From NCBI GenBank assembly GCA_023515725.1, contig JALDTO010000192.1:558001-622000 (forward strand): a DNA stretch of 64,000 nt, in the 5' to 3' direction. Under the pieces are notes generated by a model that saw only the letters and a program-made list of their open reading frames with translations, was not told the DNA's origin and ran no database searches. The DNA comes from Amoeboaphelidium protococcarum X5. Its lineage: Eukaryota; Fungi; Aphelidiomycota. A program made the position numbers and the translations under genes. Shown in pieces: positions 5,300 to 59,429 of the stretch (position 1 is the stretch's first letter; every line of letters begins with the position of its first letter).

Positions 5300-5661
5300 A
5301 CGTGATGCATGAATGTCACTACCAGATAATTATGAATTAATAAATACATAATTTAATTCACAGGCTTCATACTGATTTTGTCACTTTCTGCATATTTAAA
5401 AGCTTCATACACTTTTATTGTCACTTTTCGACTAAATTACGATCACTACATTTTCAATGTGGCTTTGATGACAGCGACGTTGAAACAATTCTCAATCGGC
5501 TCGGCTCGGCGCGTTTGAAGATTGTTGAAGCCTCACCGTTTTATAAACGTCATGCGTCACCTTCCTCCTCTCTTCTCTCTTTACTATTATTAATATTGTG
5601 CACCTTAATCATTTATAATCATAACATTATCTTGATTGATACTTTAGTTTGGCCTTTCAAA

Positions 5662-6618
5662 ATGACAAACTCATCCGATCAGTTGGTTCTGAAGCGAGGA
5701 TTAGCGTAGATGCTGAAGGGCGGCGTCATCATGGACGTGGTCGATGTTGAGTAGGCCAAGATTGCTGAACAGGCAGGTGCGTGCGCAGTTATGGCTCTGG
5801 AACGTGTACCTGCTGATATTCGTAAAGATGGCGGTGTTGCTCGGATGTCCGATCCTAAGATGATCAAAGAGATTCAAAAGGCGGTGTCTATTCCCGTCAT
5901 GGCCAAGTGTCGCATCGGCCACTTTATCGAGGCAAGAGTGTTGGAAAGTATCGGTGTGGATTACATTGATGAGAGTGAAGTTTTGACTCCAGCGGATCCG
6001 TATCTACATATTGACAAGCACCCATTCCAGATACCGTTTGTGTGTGGCTGTAGAAACTTGGGTGAAGCTTTGAGGAGAATTAATGAAGGTGCTGCTATGA
6101 TTAGAACTAAAGGTGAAGCTGGAACCGGAGATGTAATTAATGCAGTTCAACATGCAAGAAATCTGTAGAATGATATCAAGAAAGCGTAGTCACTGCTCAA
6201 GTAAGATTAGATGATTCCGGACTATCCTGTGTAGAAGCTACCTCAGGATTTCCATGATCTTGCCAAGGAGTATCGCGTACCTGTAGAGTTATTGCATCAA
6301 ACTGTGCGTGAAGGTAGATTGCCTGTGGTCAACTTTGCGGCAGGTGGAATTGCTACACCCGCAGATGCGGTGATGATGATGCACCTGGGTATGGACGGCG
6401 TTTTTGTTGGCTCGGGTATTTTCAAGTCTGCAGATCCAGCTAAACGTGCACGGGCCATCGTCCAAGCTGTAAGTCATTTTGACAACTTTGAAATTTTGGC
6501 TCAAGTTAGTGAAGGTTTGGGTGAGGCCATGGTTGGCATAAACTGTGATTAGATGTGGAAAGGCGGTGCCGCTAATGGCCAAACTGGTTATATTAAAATG
6601 AGTGAGAGAGGAGATTGA
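5662..6618 (+). CDS. PDX1: Pyridoxal 5'-phosphate synthase subunit Pdx1/Snz1
   Basis: GLA(Q=TAG)[34 protein letters not shown]-terminal MSERGD*. Confidence 0.97.
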
Positions 6619-12630: not shown

Positions 12631-13425
12631 ATGAATTACTCACCGTTGGATCAATAGTTGCTGAATGCTGTTCAGTTTGTGGATGAAGAGCCGGAACAGC
12701 AGATTGGTGGATAAAGTCAATATGCATCGGAACTGCCAGAAGAGTTGTAACGCAGCGGAAAGAGAACTGGCCCGAAGGGAGTGCTGGCTGATTATCATGA
12801 ACATTAAAGAGAGGAGCACCGTTAAAGATTTAACGAGTAGAGTTCTATAGTTTAGCAGGCTTATAAGTACTCTATGGCCCTTACTTTGCCGCAATAAGAT
12901 GTCTATCAAGGCTAACAGTAATAGTCACTAAATGACGACGACCAGCAGTTCATTGAGGAATATCGACAGAAGAGATTGCGCGACTTGAAACAACAGCAAA
13001 GTCAGCCGCGTTAAAGAGTCAAATATGGCGATTTGAGGATCATTGGAGCGTCGTCTTATGTCAGAGAAGTTGAAGATTGTAGTGGTGGGGTCAAAGTGCT
13101 GGTATTGTTGCGCGTGCGTAATTAGTTATGCCAAGAAATTAGCCAGATGTTATAGTTGATAGCCAAAAAGTATTGCTTTGCCAAATTCCTGTCAATTGAT
13201 GCTCTGGACGCGGATCCTTAATACGATCTGATTGCAATTCCATCTATTTTAGTTTATCAAGATGGTGATTTGGTTGTTAATATGACAAGATTAATTGATT
13301 ATATTCCGTCATACAAATCTGGCGAAGGTTTTGATGCTCAAGATCTTGAGTCATGTCTGTTGAAAGCTAATGCAATTGAAAGTAGGGATGCAGAAGACTT
13401 TGAGTGCACATTAAATGAACTGTGA
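12631..13425 (+). CDS. Phosducin-like protein (PhLP1 type)
   Basis: TGPKGVLADY motif, FIEEYRQKRLRDL, thioredoxin-like AIPSILVYQDGDLV. Confidence 0.85.
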
Positions 13426-16625: not shown

Positions 16626-17290
16626 TATTTATCGACTGGTGCAATTAATTGTAAATTTATTAAACGTGCTGCTGTAAAAGAAAGTGAGGCAAGCAATGAG
16701 ATTCAATAAATGTGATCGTCTAATCAGAGCACGCCGTCTGTAACAGCATTGCAAGCGACTGATCACTATGAATTGACCATTCAGGTGCATTGTTAAAAGA
16801 CCGAAATTACTAGAGTATGCAATATACTAAACGTTTGTAATGCAATACTTTTTCATAAATCTTATATTAATAATTCTCGAAGAATGAAGTCCAAACTGAT
16901 CTTGAACTTGAAATCTGTGGCGAATGAGGTGCCAGTCTTGTACTGTAGATAGATATCTTGTTTGGGCAACAGAGGACATTAAGGCTTTCTAGTATACTGT
17001 ATATCTCTTTTAATATATAGTGACATGATTTTGAAAGTCCTATGGAAATACCGTAAGCAAAATCGCTATAATGTACCTTATACTCAGGCGAAAGGCTTGG
17101 ATTAGTGTAACACGGTCATTTCAGATCACGCTAAATACAATTGTAACCTGCGTGACCTCTGTGCCAAGACTGATTGGCTGTAAAAGGCTTGAAGTTGCAC
17201 GTACATGATACCAATCTTTTGGAATGTGTTATATATTTATTCTTTATCTTGAAATCCCCAAATCTTGTCAAGAGACATCATACTAAAATC

Positions 17291-19255
17291 ATGCACGTAC
17301 GATTATTGATTGGAATACTAATTATCTGTTTATTGAAGCTCGATAATAATGCGCAAACTGCTAATCCTCCTGCTTAAAGCAAGGCAGGTCCAGTGCAGCA
17401 GAGGCAAGCGCCAACCTAAAAGCCTGCTCAAAGCGTGACTCCTGCAAGGAGAGCGTAAGTTGCTGCCAGTCCATAATAATAGTAATAATAATAATTACCT
17501 AGACCGCCTGCATCTGGTCAGTCAGCGTAGCCGCAAATGCTCGCTCAGAGACAAGCACCTCTCAACGCGTCTGTACCTGCCCAGGATTCCACAGTTGCAC
17601 CGCAACCTTCTGCAGATAGATAAAGTGGCAGTAATGACAACAAGCGTGTGCCGTCATAGGGTCCCCAAGCTGCACCTGCGCGTAAAATTGCGAATCCTCA
17701 GCAGCCGCGCCCAGTTTAGTCTACTGCACCAGCGCCCGTTGCTTAACCAGCTGCTGCCGACGCTCGACCTGCGCCAGTCGCTGATCAACCTAAAGCGCCA
17801 GAGTAACAAAAGTCTATTAATATACCCGAGCCTGTAGTCGCTCCTTCTGAACATGTCAAACCTGAAAATAGAGCTCGCTCATTTGGAGCTGAGACAGAAG
17901 AGATGAAAGGCTAGGCCGTCGGCGATGATAAAGCTGTTGAAAGGTTAGCTGCGCCTGAAGCTACCAAGCCAGAGCCTTAAAAACCTACTGGCGATGATAG
18001 TAAAGAGAGAATGGCTGCAGCTGATCAATCTGTCCAAGAGGAAACAGAGGCGAAATAAGAGCCTCGCAAATTAGCACCTAAAGTGGACGAGACTGTCTCC
18101 ACAGGTGGTACTAGTTCGTAATTGCCTAAGGAGTCTGAGGTGAAAGAGTCACCTCCTTCACCTAGACAAGCTGATCCACCTTTGTCCGCTGATGGTAATA
18201 ATAAAACTGAGACGCGTCCGCCGGTTGCTGAGCCGCCTTCTAAACCTGCCCCTGTTCCAGAGCCTACATAACTTCCAAGTCCTACCTAAAGCGGAGATGA
18301 TCAAAAGCCCAAAGACTCCGCAGCTTAGTAACCTGATATTCCAACACCTCCGTTGAGTGGAAATGAGGCCTCTAACACTGGATCGTCTGCTGGTGGCCTT
18401 AATGGCGGAGAGCAGTAGTAACCAGCTGCTAGTATGCCAGTAGCGAATGAGGCTCCTCAAGGGTAGGTCGCTGCTCCGTTAGAGAATTAGCTACCATAGT
18501 AATCATAGCAATTTAACAATTCTGCGCCTGCACAGATGGCGTAGCCACCATCGTAGGTGTAACCAGCGAACACCACTGTAGCAGAGAATCAAAGCGAGAG
18601 TGTGCCAAAGTCGGCTGCTTCATCCGATGCGTCTGATGTTGCTTAGCAGGATGTAGCTAATAAAGGAGTGAAGGAGCCTACTGTTAAAGAACCTGTCGCT
18701 ACACCTCCTCCTCCTCCTCCGCCTGTGTAACCGCCTGCTGTCCAGCCGTCTCCCCCTTAACCTCTTGCTCCGCCTCAAGTTCAATTGCCACCACCACCGC
18801 CTACTCCTCCAGCTACAAAAGTTGATGAAAAGAAGGAAACTGACAAGGCTTAGTCTCCCATCAGCCAGCCTTAACTCGTCAATCAATCTTAGCCATAAGA
18901 TTCATCATAGTAAAATGTTGAATTCAAAGCAGCATCTATTGACGATGTAGACGCGGTTACCGGATAGCCTCCTAGTTCTCAGGTCATTGCAGAACGAATC
19001 AAGAAGCTCCCTAACTAAGGATGGTCTAACTTTAGACGCGCGGGACCTCAATAGTAATCAGAGTCAGGAAAATAAGCACCTGCATCCTTCGGAGTATCAT
19101 CTGCTGGTGGCCTGGTTAAAGATGAGAAAACTGGTGAAAGAAAGAGGGGTCCTCTGACAATAACTCAAGCTGACATCTCCGGAGGTTCTAATCATTGTAC
19201 AATTTCCATTCTATCAGCGTCTATAGCAGTTTTATTATCGTTACTGCTTCTTTGA
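17291..19255 (+). CDS. Secreted Pro/Gln/Ala-rich low-complexity protein with putative GPI signal (654 aa)
   Basis: N-terminal MHVRLLIGILIICLL; C-terminal SGGSNHCTISILSASIAVLLSLLLL*; poly-Q encoded by TAA/TAG. Confidence 0.75.
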
Positions 19256-53535: not shown

Positions 53536-53822
53536 TTCTAATTTGTGTTTTTGTATCAAACAGAAACAAAGATCTAAAAACCGCGCGTGCATTTTGAACA
53601 CTTGAAACTAATAATGATTTGATCGTGGTTGGTATCAATTGATATTTTGAATGATTATACATTCTCTTTACTATAGTACCATAGGTATCATTTGATATAG
53701 AATGAAGTGCAATTAATTGGTTCAAGTGTTAATTCAAGTCAATAATTACGGACTCGATTCTCTTTCCTCTTTAGCGGATCATTAAAACGTTTGAAAATTG
53801 ATCAAACCTCGTATAAGATAAA

Positions 53823-54929
53823 ATGGTGTCTATTGACGTGGAATAGACTTAGATCTTAGACGTATAGTCCGCTGACTAGCAGTTACCTCCTAACAATAAT
53901 AATGATAAGTAAAGAGCGAAAGATAGAAAGAGAAAGTCTGATGGTGGTGCATTATCTGAGCGCGATGCTAAAAAGAAGCTTCGTCAAGAGCGAAAGTTGA
54001 AGAAGAAACTCAAGGTCTCCGAACTATTGGAGCTACCCGTGGAAGATGTCAGTTCTATCGGCGCGTTAAACCCGGAGAAAAAGTAGAAATACAATAATAA
54101 TCTGGGTGTATGGATTGGAAATCTCGCTTTCAGTACCAAGGCTGAGTAGTTGAAAAAGTTTTTGATATCGCATCAGACTACACCATCGGCTATAACGCGT
54201 TTGAAAATGCCACATTAGAAGTTGAGTGGTTAGTAGCTCTTTAATAAAGGATTTGCTAAAGTGTACTTTGAGTCTGAAGATGGTGTCACCCAGGCAGTGA
54301 CATTGTCCGAATCAGACTTTGAAGGTAGAAAGCTGCTGATCAAGCGTATAGATAATTTTGAAGGCCGACCTGATGAAGAGTCGCGCGTCATTGGTAGTGG
54401 CGGTGAGGATGGCAATGGTAAGCTGTCGGGTAAGTCCACCCACCTAGTACCAAACACGAAAATATTTATTGGTAATCTGCCGTTTGATACCAAGCTGGCG
54501 GATGTGCAGTAATGGTTCTCTCAGTATGGCCCGATCGCTAATGTCCGTCTCGCTCAGTTTGAAGACTCTGGAAAGTGTCGCGGTTTTGGGCACGTTATCT
54601 TTTATAACCTGGAATCAGCTAAATCTGTTATCAATGCATCCACCCAAGGACACTTGAAGGTGGAGTTTAAACGCAAGAGTCAGGATGATGATTCCACACC
54701 AGCTGAGAGCGTAGAGTGTAAAGTCAAAGTGGAGTATGGAGCTAAACACGACGCCAAGACATTCTCTAATGTCAAAAGAAATCGTGATTAAAATAGGTCG
54801 GGATTTAAAGATAGACATGCTAGGCGCGATAATTATCAAGTCGGACAGGATTCACCTGCTATTTAATAGTAATAATAATAGTAGCAGAAACCTCAAAATA
54901 CAAAGATTGTCTTCAGTGACGATGACTGA
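53823..54929 (+). CDS. Nucleolar two-RRM protein, Nop13-like
   Basis: GVWIGNLAFST, NKGFAKVYF, LSESDFEGRKLLIK, IFIGNLPFD, FEDSGKCRGFGHVIF, KIVFSDDD*. Confidence 0.8.
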
Positions 54930-55089
54930 TAGATACAGTAGGCTGATGCTTTCAATATCTCGCTTCATGACTGAGACTGAAATTTTTAATAAAATTTAAA
55001 GTGCACCTAAACAGACATAATGTATATTCACATTCTATTTGAAATTCCCTTCCACTAATCCATTATCCAAGCATCAATCAATCAATCAG

Positions 55090-55647
55090 TCAATCAAATG
55101 TTATAAGCTCATGCTCGACCACCACTAACTAAAGATGAGAAATTGATGTAAAGTCAAATGAAGAAAGCTTACCTTCTTTCTACAAACGGGGCCTAGCCAT
55201 GGACGAGGAAGACTGAGGATTCATTTTCTATGCATTAAATCCAGCTGTGGTGGATGATGTAGCTCCAATAGGTGGAATGTAATCACTGGCTGATGATTAT
55301 GATCTCTCAGCCAACTCCTCCTCTCGAGCCACCTTGGCATTGAGCCAACTTTACCAAGAGCAAAACACCAGAAAGAAAGCGTAAACCGCTGCAGCTATAA
55401 AGCAATTATTCGCCGCAGTCTCAGTGTCTTCAATAGGTTCCTTGCCTTTAGTGAGAACGTGGTTGCCTTACTTTATAAGCGATCCCAACACTAACTACAT
55501 CAATGTGATAACAGTCACCAATACATGTGGGTGGATGTAAGTTTAGCTGTAATAAAATCTCAATTAAAATCATACCAAGAATACAATGCCAAAGGCACTA
55601 AGTCCAGAACAATAAATAGACTATATCCGACTCACATAAGGCTTCAT
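55090..55647 (-). CDS. V-ATPase subunit f / RNASEK homologue; intron 55495-55575 (3' end uncertain)
   Basis: MKPYVSRIQSIYCSGLSAFGIVFL|LVLG..AANNCFIAAAVYAFFLVFCSWQ resembles the two-TM subunit f family. Confidence 0.75.
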
Positions 55648-55988
55648 GATACTATACCCTTGGACTCTAGAAATTTATGCAGGATTTTACGGCAAAAGAA
55701 CGATTTAACTGCGAGCTGAAAGAGATTATTGTGCGCGCAAAGACTTTTCACTAAAGAAGGGACGAGCTTATCAGAGCAAGAGAGAGAAATCGAGAGAGTT
55801 GTCGTTGTGGACTTTATTATTCTGTCTGAAAAAGATTTTTTCCCCGTCTCTGTTCCTTAGGAATTCCGCCGCCTGCCAACTTTCACTTCACTTTCCTTTC
55901 GATCCTCCAACGCTAATCATCATCATCATTATTCTTAATACCATTTACAGTAGAGTTTTCTTATAACTAATAAAAACTATTATATAAA

Positions 55989-56351
55989 ATGCCGGGAAAT
56001 ATGCCATTGTTGGAGGTGGACAACTGGTTGCACCAGGTTACTTGCTTGTATGCTGCAGCCATTCCTATATACATCTTTGTGAACAATCACCTGGGCCCAA
56101 AGACGATGGAGCCAATGTTCTGCCGTGATTTCCTCATGTCTCACTTTGAGAAGATTGCCTCTGCTCCGTCTGCAGTCTAGGCTGCACAAGCTGGTTCATC
56201 ATCAGCATCATCTGCCACTACTGCATCATTTGTGCCAAAGCTGTAAAAGTTGCCATTTGCCAGATTTGGTAATGCCGCTTTCGGTAGCGGAAATGTTCGT
56301 TCCCGCGTCGCTGGAGTCACCTTGAAGGGATTGGCTGCTCTCTTTAAATGA
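55989..56351 (+). CDS. ATP8: Putative nucleus-encoded ATP synthase subunit 8 with C-terminal targeting-like extension (120 aa)
   Basis: From Met at 56001, MPLLEVDNWLHQVT..I...I.......P........RDF aligns without gaps to yeast Atp8 as recalled (M1,P2,L4,Q12,T14,I21,I25,P33,R42,F44); uses the nuclear code (TAG/TAA=Gln). Confidence 0.65.
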
Positions 56352-56810
56352 GAATTTAATGATTTAATGTTGGAATCATATGAAATAAATGCAGATCTAG
56401 TTCTCTAGTACTGTTTTCAGTCTTTGTACATTTGGATGTAAAACTACATGGTGGAAAGTTGGTACTTTTATTAGTGCTTCGTAATCGCCTACCACTGTCA
56501 GTTACTGCAATACAACATACGATCACAGAACGATTCAAAATGTTAAGTATGACGTAAATCGCTTTAACAGGTACACGTATATATGCGAAATCGCCCAATT
56601 ATCACTCTATATATGAACTAAATGATATCATAGTTGAACGAAGGGCGCGCGTGTAGAGACTGTTCAAATAATAAGGCTCAACTTTCGAGACGCCTTTGCG
56701 CGCTTTTTATCTCTTTGCCGTTGTTACACAGAGGTGTTGCGCGTAAAATTACAGTCGCTGTCGTCAAAATTATTCCCTTAACTCGTGGTTACTTACTTAG
56801 TAGGAGTGTT

Positions 56811-57836
56811 ATGAGCATGCTGTCAAAGGCAAAGAAAATTGGTACGCATAGTGGCACCTTCCATGCGGATGAGAGCTTGGCGTGTTGGATGTTGAAGCAG
56901 ACTAAAGAGTTTGCCGATGCAGAGATTGTCCGCTCCCGTGACCCGTCTGTGCTTGATCAGTGTGATATTCTGGTGGATGTTGGTGGTGTGTATGATCCAG
57001 CGAAGCATAGATACGATCATCATTAGAGGGAATTTAATGAGTTCATGTCTATCGGAGGCACTGATTACAAGGTTACCAAACTGTCTTCTGCCGGTCTTAT
57101 CTATCGTCACTTTGGTAAAGAGGTGTTGTAGAGTATCATGGATGACAACAGTTAAATCACTGGATTGACTGCAGGCGCTGATTATAAGGCTGACATTGAC
57201 GTGGTGTACAAAAAGGTGTATGATGACTTTATCGAGGCTATGGACGCCATCGATAATGGAGTATCGCGTTACCCGGACACGGTGAAGGGAAAGTACCGTG
57301 AGAGTACACATTTGTCTGCTCGCGTTGGACGCCTTAATCCATGGTGGAATTAGGATGACTCTGATATGGATGAACGCTTTGCCAGAGCAATGTAGATTTG
57401 TGGCGAGGAATTGAGAGATCGCGTACTGTTCATCTCCAAAGCATGGCTACCAGCTAGAGACTTGGTTAAGAAGGCGCTGGATGATCGATACAAGGTGGAT
57501 AAGAGTGGAAAGATTTTGGTCTTTGATCAATCGCTACCTTGGAAAGAGCATCTGTTCGATCTTGAACAAGGTTTGGATATCTATGAAGAACGGCCTCTAT
57601 ATGCTCTATACCCTGATTGGAGTAACAAATGGCGTGTACAATGCATTCCCCTATAAAGTGAAGGATTTACCAACCGTAAGCCTCTGCCGGAGTCATGGCG
57701 TGGATTGCGTGATGAAGCCCTGTCTCAGCACATTGGTATCCCTGGCTGTATATTCGTACACGCTGCTGGCTTTATTGGTGGTAACGCTACCAAGGAAGGT
57801 ACTCTTCAAATGGCTATCAAGGCTGTTTAAAGTTGA
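56811..57836 (+). CDS. MYG1: MYG1 exonuclease
   Basis: IGTHSGTFHADE, DVGGVYD, YDHH(Q=TAG)R, KLSSAGLIY, DAIDNG, FVHAAGFIGG. Confidence 0.95.
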
Positions 57837-57978
57837 TCATTGATCAAATTTTGGAGTATAACATGAAAAATTGCTTTGCATATAATAGGGAGCGTATTAA
57901 ATTTGATCGCAGCTTTAATTTGATCTTTTCACCTGTCTTGTCATTTCATCGCGCGTTGCAACTTTTAAGTCGTCAAGT

Positions 57979-59429
57979 ATGAAGCATTTATTATAGTCAA
58001 TCGCATCCACCACCCTCTTGCTAGCTTTGATGCTAGCGCAAGTCTGCGCATCATCACCTGCTACTAGTACTTTCGGTAAATAGGTGCTAGTGGTTGCAGA
58101 TAAGGGAAGCGTGGCACAAGTTGAAAAGGATTACAGCTAATTTTGGTCTCAGCTAAAGAGTATGTCCTATATAACATTCTTCCAATCTATTTTCACAAAT
58201 TAATACTGTATGTAGAGCGAGATTTTAATTTGACTTTTGCTGATGTGTCCACCGCTGAGTTGTTCAAGTATGGTTAGAAGACGTGCGATAACTTGATTAT
58301 GTTCTCACCTGAAGTCTAGTCGCTGGGTGGCAGCGGCGGTAATAATAGCAAGTTCAGTGCTAGCGATGTTATTGCCTTTGTCGGTCAGGGAGGTAATGTG
58401 TTGCTGACTGCATCATCCACCTCTGGCTCAGCAGTTCGTAAATTGGCTTTAGAGTTTGGATTTGAGTTGGATCCCAGCGGTACTTTATTAGCGGGCGCGA
58501 GCGACAAGGTGGTGGATAAGTCTCTTGATGCTGAGTATGGTAGTGGTAGTGGTAATATGACTGTTATAAAGGTGGATGTTGATTCCGAGTTGCCATTCCT
58601 TACCAAGTCTGGTGGTAGTGGTTAGGTGTTATTCCACGGTATTGGACATCGCTTGGTCGAACATAACAACTTGGTGTTCCCTGGCTTGAAAGTTGATTCT
58701 AATTCAGTCGATATTATTGACTCCAAGACTGGTACTAAGAAGAAGACTACGGGAGATGATAAAGATAATGTTCTAGTAGGTCTATCATAGGCAAGGAACA
58801 ATGCAAGAGTGTTATTTACCGGTTCTATGGCCATGTTTTCTGATAAGTTTATGAAAGCGGATGGCTAGAGTGGTAATGCTCAAGTTGTTACCTAATTAAC
58901 CAGTTGGCTATTCCAGGAAGTTGGTTAGATCAGAGTAAAGTCTGCAAATCACCATAGATTGAATGAGAAGAAGCCACTGAAATAGTACAGAATCAAGGAT
59001 CCATTTGTGTATGAGATTGAACTGGAAGAACTAGTGAACGGTAAATGGCGCCCATTCTAGTTGCCATCCAAGGATGATAAGGTGCAGTTGGAATTTGTAA
59101 TGTTGGATCCATTTATCAGAACTAATCTGGTGCCTTCGCAGGGTGGAAAGTTTGTGACGCGCCCGGATTTAATCCTACCTGATGTCCACGGCGTATACAC
59201 CCTCAAGGTCGAGTACAAGCGCAGAGGTTACTCGTACATTGTGCAGAAGGATGTGGTTAGTATCGTGCCGTTTAGACATAATGAGTATCCGCGATTTCTG
59301 GTAGCTGCGTATCCGTATTATGCTAGCGTGGGACTGAGTATGAGTGTGTTCATCTTATTCACCATGTTCTATCTGTATTATCAAGATCCAAGTGTAACAT
59401 CAGCGAATGAAGGCAAGAAGAAGAAATGA
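57979..59429 (+). CDS. WBP1: Oligosaccharyltransferase subunit Wbp1/OST48; intron 58160-58215
   Basis: Signal peptide, QARNNARVLFTGS, VQLEFVMLDPFIR, PDVHGVYTLKVEYKRRG, RHNEYPRFLVAAYPYY, TM, KKKK end. Confidence 0.95.

What the first reader, a model, noticed from the sequence alone, without database searches (positions are those of the whole stretch)
55989..56351. Nucleus-relocated ATP8 with an inverted C-terminal mitochondrial presequence-like tail
Seen: residues 5-49 align without gaps to yeast mitochondrial Atp8 as I recall it (MPxL, Q12/T14, P33, R42, F44), with a less hydrophobic TM (YAAAIPIYIFV). A Ser/Ala linker follows, then an acid-free Arg/Lys/Ala/Gly tail (PKLQKLPFARFGNAAFGSGNVRSRVAGVTLKGLAALFK*) that reads backwards like a presequence (KFLAALGKLTVGAVRSR...). 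The ORF uses the nuclear TAR=Gln code and lies among intron-bearing nuclear genes. Established: atp8 is normally mtDNA-encoded in fungi and animals; Atp8 has N-terminus in the intermembrane space and C-terminus in the matrix; C-terminal presequences (yeast Hmi1) can drive C-to-N import. Inference: a natural endosymbiotic transfer in which reverse import plus stop-transfer gives the native topology while keeping the MPxL region free. Relevant to allotopic expression.
Basis: partly seen in the sequence, partly recalled or inferred. Interest (0 to 1): 0.92.

Follow-up and report, generated by a model that had tools for sequence, protein, structure and literature searches.

The report
Nuclear ATP8-like gene in an aphelid
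A small, conserved and probably transcribed nuclear gene of the algal parasite Amoeboaphelidium protococcarum is probably the ATP synthase subunit 8 gene missing from its mitochondrial DNA. It carries a basic C-terminal tail where an N-terminal import signal would be expected.

Summary
Window 55989-56351 (+) is a 120-codon, TGA-terminated ORF with two in-frame TAR codons, in Amoeboaphelidium protococcarum, which reads TAR as Gln. GenBank calls it a hypothetical protein.

It is a real gene:
- A homeologous copy differs by 7 synonymous and 3 conservative changes plus a 6-nt in-frame indel, while the flanks decay.
- A metatranscriptome contig covers just this gene.
- Seventeen relatives lie on aphelid-like nuclear contigs, some with shared synteny.

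ATP8 identity is supported but not proven:
- Pfam ATP8 models and PDB sequence searches give nothing.
- A profile-profile comparison with ATP8 and alphaproteobacterial b' sequences harvested here gives probability 86-92%, P 1e-6 to 5e-6. The alignment is gapless and starts at ATP8 residue 1.
- That score is far above column-shuffle and real-membrane-helix controls, and it stays in register without the MPxL columns.
- The 28.4-kb mtDNA contig and three aphelid-like mt contigs have atp6, and all but one partly held contig have atp9, but none has atp8. An ATP8 profile found nothing elsewhere in the assembly.
- Nuclear subunits b and d are present.

The acid-free, basic tail (net +6 to +8) is conserved across the family. 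Its role as a C-terminal import signal is untested inference.

My odds: ATP8 orthologue about 0.6; C-to-N import about 0.25.

The parts
55989..56351 (+). Complete intronless CDS, 120 codons plus TGA, read in the TAR=Gln nuclear code; identical to database protein P0025
   Evidence: homeolog comparison
55989..56000 (+). Four-residue N-terminal extension (MPGN) before the conserved internal Met-Pro; other family members have MGG, MG, MS or MHG here
56001..56012 (+). MPLL, the counterpart of the ATP8 MPQL motif. Met and Pro are present wherever the N-terminus is correctly called; the ATP8 Gln is replaced by Val, Leu, Ile or Met.
56025..56081 (+). Weakly hydrophobic predicted membrane helix (residues 13-31), aligned to the ATP8 transmembrane helix
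56097..56099 (+). Invariant Pro37, which is Pro33 in ATP8 numbering (the helix-ending kink proline of yeast subunit 8); a Lys or Arg follows in all members but one
   Evidence: PMC4980432
56100..56162 (+). Conserved post-membrane segment (residues 38-58, motifs EP.F.RDFLMAHFEKI) holding Arg46, which is ATP8 Arg42; the model continues the helix through it
56163..56234 (+). Ser/Ala/Thr-rich, length-variable, low-confidence linker. It contains the in-frame TAG (56178-56180) and the 6-nt indel between the homeologs.
56235..56348 (+). Acid-free basic tail (residues 83-120, six Lys/Arg in the last 36) with the in-frame TAA (56244-56246), a conserved P..LP..FAR motif and a terminal amphipathic helix (103-118) ending L-A-A-L-F-K
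55934..56394 (+). Extent of a colinear 476-nt contig from a freshwater metatranscriptome (about 95% identical, homeolog-like); it runs from 55 nt upstream of the ATG to 43 nt past the stop
56384..56389 (+). AATAAA hexamer 33 nt after the stop; the RNA-library contig ends 5 nt beyond it

Best explanation
The ORF encodes the nucleus-encoded ATP synthase subunit 8 (Atp8/A6L, descended from the alphaproteobacterial b' subunit) of Amoeboaphelidium protococcarum. The gene left the mtDNA in an ancestor of an aphelid-like clade. Three things changed after the move: the membrane helix became less hydrophobic, a 2-4 residue extension was added before the old start Met-Pro, and a roughly 60-residue C-terminal addition appeared, made of a flexible Ser/Ala linker and an acid-free basic amphipathic tail. 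Shown here: the gene is real, conserved, nuclear and probably transcribed; it shows in-register profile similarity to ATP8/b'; atp8 is absent from the mtDNA contigs of this clade. Inferred: the N-terminal 45-55 residues sit in Fo next to subunit a, with the N-terminus in the intermembrane space. Also inferred: the basic tail supplies the mitochondrial targeting information that an N-terminal presequence cannot supply without disturbing the MPxL end. The tail would either lead import C-terminus first, with the membrane helix arresting in TIM23, or act as an internal or terminal matrix-targeting-like signal. The stated confidence is for the ATP8 identity. I rate the specific C-to-N import route at about 0.25.
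For: (1) It is a real gene under constraint. The homeolog on C212 is 96% identical, with 7 synonymous and 3 conservative changes, a 6-nt in-frame indel and both TAR codons kept, while the flanks fall to 73-88% identity with indels that are not multiples of three. An RNA-library contig is bounded by the gene. There are 17 relatives at 39-54% identity. Those looked up lie on nuclear-type contigs with shared RRM / PAK / MYG1 / OST48 synteny. (2) hhalign of the family N-domain against ATP8/b' gives probability 91.5%, P 8.6e-7, gapless 1-43 to 1-43. The tool-level run of A4 against A5 gives probability 85.7%, P 5.4e-6, residues 5-48 to 1-44. None of 300 column shuffles reaches the score of 31 (maximum 24). 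With MPxL fixed and the rest shuffled the maximum is 19. Without the MPxL columns the alignment is still in register at score 22.6, P 6e-5. 75 real membrane-helix decoy windows from Atp6 reach at most 9.9. (3) A family HMM run against 9,639 ORFs from 84 mitochondrial and alphaproteobacterial loci ranks ATP8/b' N-termini 1-4, and they take 15 of the top 30 places, aligned from model position 1. (4) The mtDNA contig C346 (28.4 kb) has atp6, atp9, cox1-3, cob and nad genes, but no MPQL ORF, no Pfam ATP8 hit and no ATP8-HMM hit. Three other aphelid-like mt contigs also lack it, while control mt loci score 67-71 bits. No conserved unassigned small ORF is shared among these mtDNAs. An ATP8 profile finds nothing in the 23.6-Mb assembly. 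(5) The stalk partners b and d are encoded in the nucleus. (6) Reduced helix hydrophobicity and the acid-free basic tail fit a relocated inner-membrane protein. (7) Literature: subunit 8 is defined by MPQL in the intermembrane space, a membrane helix ended by Pro33 and a hydrophilic C-terminus, and it derives from the bacterial b subunit (PMC4980432). Natural atp8 transfers exist but are rare (PMC10809612). Hmi1 carries its targeting signal at the C-terminus (PMC5881500).
Against: Pfam ATP8 models (PF00895, PF05933, PF02326) give no hit at E<=10 for the protein's pieces or for 7 relatives. phmmer and a family profile find no PDB chain, although many ATP synthase structures that include subunit 8 are deposited. 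My own ATP8 HMM scores the window protein at only 4-6 bits, E 7-39 at Z=10,000. Most HMM-versus-sequence retrieval power comes from MPxL: without those columns only 2 of the top 30 are ATP8/b'. The Gln that is invariant in MPQL is not kept. The membrane helix is only marginally hydrophobic (19-aa window 0.78-1.58). The AF2 model has low confidence, pLDDT 57. There are no localisation, proteomic or binding data. The mt contigs are not proven complete, and two of the three relatives' contigs were only partly held.
Confidence: 0.58

Rival explanations
1. A lineage-specific small single-pass membrane protein unrelated to ATP8, for example an ER or plasma-membrane type III (N-out) protein with a cytosolic basic tail. 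Its N-terminal likeness to ATP8 would be chance or convergence. Aphelid ATP synthase would then either lack subunit 8 or use an undetected one.
For: No Pfam or PDB sequence-level hit. Single-sequence scores against an ATP8 HMM are insignificant. Retrieval depends largely on four residues. There is no N-terminal presequence. Acidic residues before and a basic residue after a weak hydrophobic helix would also give N-out insertion at the ER. The protein language-model atlas gave no look-alike.
Against: The profile-profile match is in register over 43-44 columns from ATP8 residue 1, far above the shuffle and real-helix controls, and it persists without MPxL. Met-Pro is kept inside the protein in all members whose N-terminus is correctly called. 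The family occurs in a clade whose mtDNAs lack atp8. Subunits a, c, b and d are present, so a subunit 8 is expected.
Confidence: 0.3
2. It is ATP8, but the C-terminal tail is not an import signal. The tail would be a matrix-side extension that binds the peripheral stalk, as the longer mammalian and plant subunit 8 C-termini do, or a membrane-surface helix. Targeting would rely on other features such as the helix itself, internal signals or Tom70.
For: Mammalian subunit 8 contacts b and d through its C-terminus, and plant subunit 8 is as long as a b subunit (PMC4980432). Canonical ATP8 C-termini are also basic. The conserved P..LP..FAR motif looks like a binding motif rather than a generic presequence. 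Internal MTS-like segments are widespread (PMC5881500).
Against: The tail is separated from the ATP8-like domain by a variable, low-complexity linker. It is acid-free with net charge +6 to +8 and forms a terminal amphipathic helix, which is presequence-like composition. No other candidate targeting element is visible. The segment just after the membrane helix is acidic, unlike Bcs1-type signals.
Confidence: 0.3
3. The ORF is not a functional gene: a chance open frame or a pseudogene.
For: It is short, and under the standard code it would stop after 63 codons.
Against: The synonymous-biased divergence between homeologs, the in-frame indel and the decaying flanks. Seventeen homologues at 39-54% identity, with conserved synteny where neighbours were looked up. 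An RNA-library contig. GenBank gene models in two strains.
Confidence: 0.02

Closest known systems
Mitochondrially encoded ATP synthase subunit 8 (fungal Atp8, animal A6L, plant/protist YMF19; Pfam PF05933, PF00895, PF02326)
   Same: An N-terminal Met-Pro-x-Leu is followed at identical spacing by an acidic residue (5), an aromatic residue (9), Gln12, a membrane helix, Pro33 with Lys/Arg34, and Arg42. The profile-profile alignment is gapless and in register. A basic C-terminal side fits the expected N-out / C-in orientation.
   Different: It is encoded in the nucleus in the TAR=Gln code. The Gln of MPQL is replaced by a hydrophobic residue. There are 2-4 residues ahead of the Met-Pro. The helix is much less hydrophobic. 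About 60 extra C-terminal residues form a linker plus an acid-free tail. It gets no hit from the Pfam models.
Alphaproteobacterial ATP synthase b' subunit (the ancestor of subunit 8; PMC4980432)
   Same: The same N-terminal motif and membrane helix register. b' sequences harvested here contribute to the matching profile and are retrieved by the family HMM.
   Different: b' continues as a long charged coiled coil of 150-200 aa. The aphelid protein has a short conserved helix, a disordered linker and a basic tail.
Other natural relocations of atp8 to the nucleus, and engineered allotopic ATP8
   Same: A nuclear gene for subunit 8. The review PMC10809612 counts fewer than 6 natural transfers and reports that allotopic atp8 works in yeast and sometimes in human cells. 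Lower hydrophobicity matches the hydrophobicity rule discussed there.
   Different: Allotopic designs place a cleavable presequence at the N-terminus (my own knowledge of the field, not checked here). This protein has none and instead carries a basic C-terminal tail. I know of no report of such a transfer in the fungal lineage (Holomycota). There the absence of atp8 from Rozella and sanchytrid mtDNAs has been read as loss (PMC8371127).
Hmi1 helicase of yeast (C-terminal mitochondrial targeting signal)
   Same: Presequence-like targeting information at the extreme C-terminus (PMC5881500 citing Lee et al. 1999). The tail here is acid-free, basic and helical at the extreme C-terminus.
   Different: Hmi1 is a soluble matrix enzyme. 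No membrane stop-transfer is involved. There is no sequence relationship, and the function of the tail here is untested.
Bcs1 / Pam18-type N-out inner-membrane proteins with an internal signal after the membrane helix (my own knowledge)
   Same: The same target topology (N-terminus in the intermembrane space, C-terminus in the matrix) without an N-terminal presequence.
   Different: In those proteins the positively charged signal directly follows the helix. Here the 25 residues after the helix carry 3-4 acidic residues, and the basic segment lies about 50 residues further on.

Membership tests
ATP synthase subunit 8 (ATP8/A6L/YMF19) | N-terminal MPQL motif | tested here: inconclusive
   Met, Pro and Leu/Phe/Met are kept (Met-Pro in all members whose N-terminus is correctly called). 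The Gln, invariant in my 11-38 ATP8/b' sequences, is Val, Leu, Ile or Met. The motif is preceded by 2-4 residues.
ATP synthase subunit 8 (ATP8/A6L/YMF19) | Single membrane helix right after the motif, ended by a conserved proline (Pro33 in yeasts) | tested here: met
   Invariant Pro37, which is Pro33 counted from the Met-Pro. The AF2 model has a helix from residue 13, at low confidence. The hydrophobic window is present but weak. Definition taken from PMC4980432.
ATP synthase subunit 8 (ATP8/A6L/YMF19) | Match to curated family HMMs (PF00895, PF05933, PF02326) | tested here: not met
   No family at E<=10 for the three pieces of the protein or for 7 relatives. My own ATP8 HMM gives 4-6 bits for the window protein, and at best 15 bits for one relative.
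ATP synthase subunit 8 (ATP8/A6L/YMF19) | Profile-profile similarity in register with ATP8/b' | tested here: met
   Probability 86-92%, P 9e-7 to 5e-6, gapless from residue 1. No shuffle (0 of 300) and no decoy (0 of 75) reaches the score. Still in register without MPxL.
ATP synthase subunit 8 (ATP8/A6L/YMF19) | Conserved Arg42 and a positively charged matrix-side C-terminus | tested here: met
   Arg46 (ATP8 Arg42) in most members, Lys, His or Tyr in four. The tail has net charge +6 to +8.
ATP synthase subunit 8 (ATP8/A6L/YMF19) | It is the only subunit-8 candidate in an organism that has the rest of Fo and the stalk | tested here: met
   atp6 and atp9 are on the mtDNA, and b and d are in the nucleus. 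No atp8 on the mt contig or in the assembly. Caveat: completeness of the mtDNA is not proven.
ATP synthase subunit 8 (ATP8/A6L/YMF19) | Physical position in Fo beside subunit a, N-terminus in the intermembrane space | not testable with these tools
   The one complex prediction gave no verdict and is not evidence either way. This needs proteomics or cryo-EM.
C-terminal mitochondrial targeting signal (Hmi1 type) | Acid-free, basic, amphipathic helix at the extreme C-terminus | tested here: met
   0 Asp/Glu and 6-8 Lys/Arg in the last 36 aa in 14 of 18 members. Terminal helix 103-118 in the model. Peak hydrophobic moment 0.3-0.6.
C-terminal mitochondrial targeting signal (Hmi1 type) | Necessary and sufficient for import; import starts from the C-terminus | not testable with these tools
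   Needs import assays with a tail deletion and tail-passenger fusions.
Tail-anchored membrane protein | C-terminal hydrophobic segment long enough to span a membrane (about 18 or more uncharged residues) | tested here: not met
   The longest run in the tail free of charged, amide, His and Pro residues is 6-15 aa, and only 6 in the window protein, where a Lys interrupts it.
Bcs1-type internal signal | Positively charged amphipathic segment directly after the membrane helix | tested here: not met
   Residues 38-58 carry conserved Glu41, Asp47 and Glu54.

The most novel reading that the evidence does not exclude
Aphelids solved the allotopic ATP8 problem in an unusual way. The protein keeps a near-native N-terminus and is imported C-terminus first, through a conserved acid-free C-terminal presequence-like tail. 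Its weakened membrane helix then arrests in the inner membrane to give the native N-out / C-in topology. This would be a natural, clade-wide example of reverse stop-transfer import of a former mtDNA-encoded Fo subunit. The same route might explain 'lost' atp8 in other Holomycota such as Rozella and the sanchytrids.
Probability: 0.25. Interest if true: 0.85.

Novelty: new variant of a known kind. Interest (0 to 1): 0.62.

Why it matters
atp8 is among the genes that rarely leave mtDNA: a recent review counts fewer than six natural transfers (PMC10809612). In the fungal lineage its absence from some mtDNAs has been written off as loss (PMC8371127).

If this family is subunit 8, the 'missing atp8' of an aphelid-like clade turns into a relocation. 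That would give a natural example from the fungal lineage of what had to change for nuclear expression: lower helix hydrophobicity, a retained Met-Pro start fossil, and targeting information placed at the C-terminus.

This bears on two questions. One is why some genes stay in mtDNA. The other is how to design allotopic ATP8 constructs for mtDNA disease models, which so far rely on N-terminal presequences. It also gives annotators a profile for finding the gene in environmental aphelid genomes.

Tried and rejected
- **Pfam scans.** The three stop-free pieces and 7 relatives gave no family at E<=10.
- **PDB sequence searches.** Piece 1 by phmmer gave only a chance viral glycoprotein hit at E 1.5. 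The family profile gave nothing.
- **Protein atlas look-alikes.** No usable hit.
- **Whole-genome search with Pfam ATP8 models.** PF05933 matched nothing anywhere, controls included, so it is uninformative. PF00895 gave two sub-threshold hits full of stops. I replaced these with my own ATP8 profile.
- **Complex prediction, Atp6 plus residues 1-66.** 'No answer': score 0.00, ESMFold2, my alignments not used. This is not evidence either way.
- **AlphaFold2 with the 17-sequence alignment.** Mean pLDDT 56.8. Because confidence is low and the protein is essentially one long helix, I ran no fold search.
- **Metagenome scan with an Atp6 alignment.** It returned only distant mitochondrial and alphaproteobacterial loci, none aphelid-like. 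These were useful as a source of true ATP8/b' sequences but not for aphelid mtDNAs.
- **ATP8 as a homology-search query.** I did not type ATP8 sequences from memory.
- **Candidate cryptic mt atp8 ORFs on C346.** The 52-aa ORF at 17210-17365 and the 41-aa ORFs have no Pfam or ATP8-HMM match and no conserved counterpart. The ORF at 1225-1347 is the last cob exon.
- **Tail-anchor and Bcs1-type readings of the tail.** Rejected on sequence grounds.
- **How the protein was handed to tools.** As stop-free pieces, or as the database entries P0025 and P0018 that the tools themselves returned. In scripts I translated with the organism's own code, table 6.

Full report
**What is there.** Window 55989-56351 (+) is an ATG-to-TGA frame of 120 codons, with an in-frame TAG at 56178 and an in-frame TAA at 56244. 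The window uses TAR as a sense codon. Reading only TGA as stop gives 121 frames of 150 aa or more, one of 3124 aa, against 9 under the standard code. The window is G000:C192:558001-622000 of a 23.6-Mb, 346-contig assembly. Database matches name the organism as Amoeboaphelidium protococcarum. The code-6 translation is identical to protein P0025. That protein sits in the cluster of KAI3633301.1 (P0018), a 'hypothetical protein' of that species. The mitochondrial Atp6 is 100% identical to the UniRef entry for the species. No in-frame ATG lies upstream of 55989 after the TGA at 55827.

**It is a real gene.**
- A second copy on contig C212 is 96% identical. Within the ORF the two copies differ by 7 synonymous and 3 conservative replacements and one 6-nt in-frame indel in the Ser/Ala linker. 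Both TAR codons are kept.
- The flanks drop to 73-88% identity with indels that are not multiples of three.
- A 476-nt contig from a freshwater metatranscriptome lies colinear on 55934-56394. It carries the homeolog's 6-nt deletion, shows no joints, and ends 5 nt after an AATAAA at 56384. It comes from an RNA library and its bounds fit a small unspliced mRNA, but contigs cannot prove transcription.
- An exhaustive phmmer search with the first 63 residues found 7 relatives (E 1e-19 to 7e-13). A profile search raised this to 17, of 92-137 aa and 39-54% identical.
- All relatives are unnamed environmental or assembly-derived proteins. Those whose contigs I looked up lie on nuclear-type DNA.
- Synteny is shared. 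An RRM gene lies upstream. A PAK-type kinase, MYG1 and OST48 lie downstream on a 138-kb scaffold. The window has RRM (53802-54926), this ORF, MYG1 (56553-57833) and OST48 (58125-59426).

**Anatomy of the family.**
- A 2-4 residue extension (MGG, MG, MS, MHG; MPGN here). Two gene calls that seemed to start at Met-Pro or later in fact have an upstream ATG.
- A Met-Pro followed by x-Leu-Glu, then Asn-Trp-Leu-x-Gln.
- A weakly hydrophobic helix.
- Asn-Asn-x-x-Gly-Pro-Lys/Arg, then a conserved EP.F.RDFLMAHFEKI segment.
- A length-variable Ser/Ala/Thr linker.
- A P..LP..FAR motif and a basic terminal helix.

AlphaFold2 with the family alignment gives a low-confidence model (pLDDT 56.8) with one long helix (13-57), a disordered linker and a terminal helix (103-118).

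**Is it ATP8? Evidence against, at the HMM-versus-sequence level.** Pfam's three ATP8 families give nothing at E<=10 for the protein's pieces or its relatives. A family profile finds no PDB chain. An ATP8 HMM that I built scores the window protein at only 4-6 bits.

**Is it ATP8? Building a comparison set.** I did not rely on remembered sequences. I harvested true ATP8 and alphaproteobacterial b' N-termini from 80 atp6-bearing metagenome loci plus one mt contig.

**Is it ATP8? Profile-profile evidence for.**
- Probability 91.5%, P 8.6e-7, score 31, a gapless alignment of family columns 1-43 to ATP8 1-43.
- The tool-level run gives probability 85.7%, P 5.4e-6, residues 5-48 to 1-44.
- No column shuffle of 300 reaches the score (mean 9.4, maximum 24).
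- With MPxL fixed and the rest shuffled the maximum is 19.
- With the four MPxL columns removed from both sides the alignment is still in register, score 22.6, P 6e-5.
- 75 real membrane-helix decoy windows cut from an Atp6 alignment reach at most 9.9.

**Is it ATP8? The reverse direction.** A family-only HMM searched against 9,639 six-frame ORFs ranks ATP8/b' N-termini 1-4, and they take 15 of the top 30 places. That enrichment depends mainly on MPxL: without it only 2 of 30 remain, both in register.

**Is it ATP8? Shared positions.** These are the ones the structural literature treats as characteristic: the N-terminal motif, the membrane helix and the kink proline 33 (PMC4980432). Gln12, Lys/Arg34 and Arg42 are also shared. 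The Gln of MPQL is not kept.

**Genomic context.**
- The mtDNA is contig C346: 28,427 bp, 22.6% GC, all genes on one strand, no TGA in coding regions, and only four tRNA genes found.
- It carries cox1-3, cob, atp6, atp9 and seven nad genes. It has no ORF starting MPQ-, no Pfam ATP8 hit among nine unassigned ORFs, and only noise against my ATP8 HMMs.
- Aphelid-like Atp6 proteins form a distinct environmental clade (210-216 aa, 54-85% identical; the next relatives are at 39% or less).
- Three long mt contigs of that clade also lack an ATP8 gene, while fungal and protist control loci score 67-71 bits.
- No unassigned small ORF is conserved among these mtDNAs.
- An ATP8 profile finds nothing in the whole assembly.
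- The nuclear genome encodes stalk subunits b and d, each in two homeologous copies.
- The organism therefore has an ordinary opisthokont-type complex V with a hole at subunit 8. The family under study occurs on aphelid-like nuclear DNA.

**Signs of relocation.** The family's helix is significantly less hydrophobic than that of the comparison set, 13 short ATP8-type sequences mostly from mtDNA (1.23 against 2.01, p 7e-6). The conserved internal Met-Pro reads like a fossil of the ancestral start. The last 36 residues have no acidic residue and 6-8 basic residues in 14 of 18 members. The hydrophobic run in the tail is only 6-15 residues, so it is not a second membrane span or a tail anchor. The segment right after the helix is acidic, so it is not a Bcs1-type signal.

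**Mechanism.**
- Shown: gene reality, conservation, nuclear location, the ATP8-like N-domain, atp8-free mtDNA contigs, and the conserved basic tail.
- Inferred: the protein is subunit 8. It needs its N-terminus in the intermembrane space near subunit a, so it cannot easily carry a conventional N-terminal presequence, and the acid-free C-terminal tail supplies targeting.
- A C-terminal targeting signal has a precedent in Hmi1 (PMC5881500).
- Whether import starts from the C-terminus and the helix stops transfer is untested. So is the alternative that the tail mainly binds the stalk, as longer subunit 8 C-termini do (PMC4980432).
- The single complex prediction returned no verdict.

**Comparison with the known, and novelty.** The closest family is ATP8/A6L/YMF19 and its b' ancestor. 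Most structural hallmarks and the profile-profile test are met. The curated-HMM test and the Gln of MPQL are not. I therefore call it a probable, divergent member rather than a proven one.
- Natural atp8 relocations are known but rare (PMC10809612).
- In Holomycota, absence of atp8 from Rozella and sanchytrid mtDNAs has been described as loss (PMC8371127).
- I found no held paper describing a nuclear atp8 in aphelids. The 2022 aphelid genome paper is not in the searched library, so earlier mention cannot be excluded.
- GenBank labels the protein hypothetical.

**Verdict.** My odds:

| Reading | Probability |
|---|---|
| The family is the relocated subunit 8 | about 0.58 |
| An unrelated lineage-specific membrane protein | about 0.3 |
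| Not a gene | about 0.02 |
| Reverse-import mechanism | about 0.25 |

Interest is 0.62: a new variant of a known kind, and directly testable by complex V proteomics and import assays.

Noticed in passing
G000:C346 (L010, L012, L011), whole contig: The mtDNA contig (28.4 kb, 22.6% GC) shows only four tRNA genes by ARAGORN: Trp-CCA, Gln, Asn and Tyr, clustered at 5641-6226. It uses no TGA codon in 14 coding regions (46 TGG). This suggests heavy tRNA import and a standard-like Trp code.
   Followed up: partly
G000:C346:25583-25806 (L011:5583-5806): A tandem repeat between atp6 and nad4L translates as repeated PKTDSDRI units in one frame. It is probably a non-coding minisatellite.
   Followed up: no
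L098:2876-3668 and 12632-13201; L099:7504-8196; contig of P0062: Aphelid-like environmental mt contigs carry fragments of family-B DNA polymerase genes (PF03175). These look like remnants of integrated linear mitochondrial plasmids.
   Followed up: no
Proteins P0028-P0075: Aphelid-like Atp6 proteins are 210-216 aa, about 35 aa shorter than their nearest relatives. They form a sharply separated clade (54-85% against 39% or less identity) with dozens of environmental members, which implies much unsampled aphelid diversity.
   Followed up: no
window 53802-59426 and L015:8346-15572: The gene order RRM protein, ATP8-like gene, MYG1, OST48 is shared between the window and a 138-kb environmental scaffold. 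The scaffold has an extra PAK-type kinase between the ATP8-like gene and MYG1.
   Followed up: partly
window 55093-55569 (-): A TGA-only open frame on the opposite strand just upstream of the gene contains a hydrophobic stretch. It may be another small membrane-protein gene, and the two homeologs are about 95% identical over part of it.
   Followed up: no
G000:C233:465080-465568, C214:637320-637808, C98:1576158-1576475, C211:22499-22801: ATP synthase subunits b and d are each present as two diverged copies with in-frame TAR codons. This is consistent with a hybrid or polyploid genome in which most genes have a homeolog.
   Followed up: no
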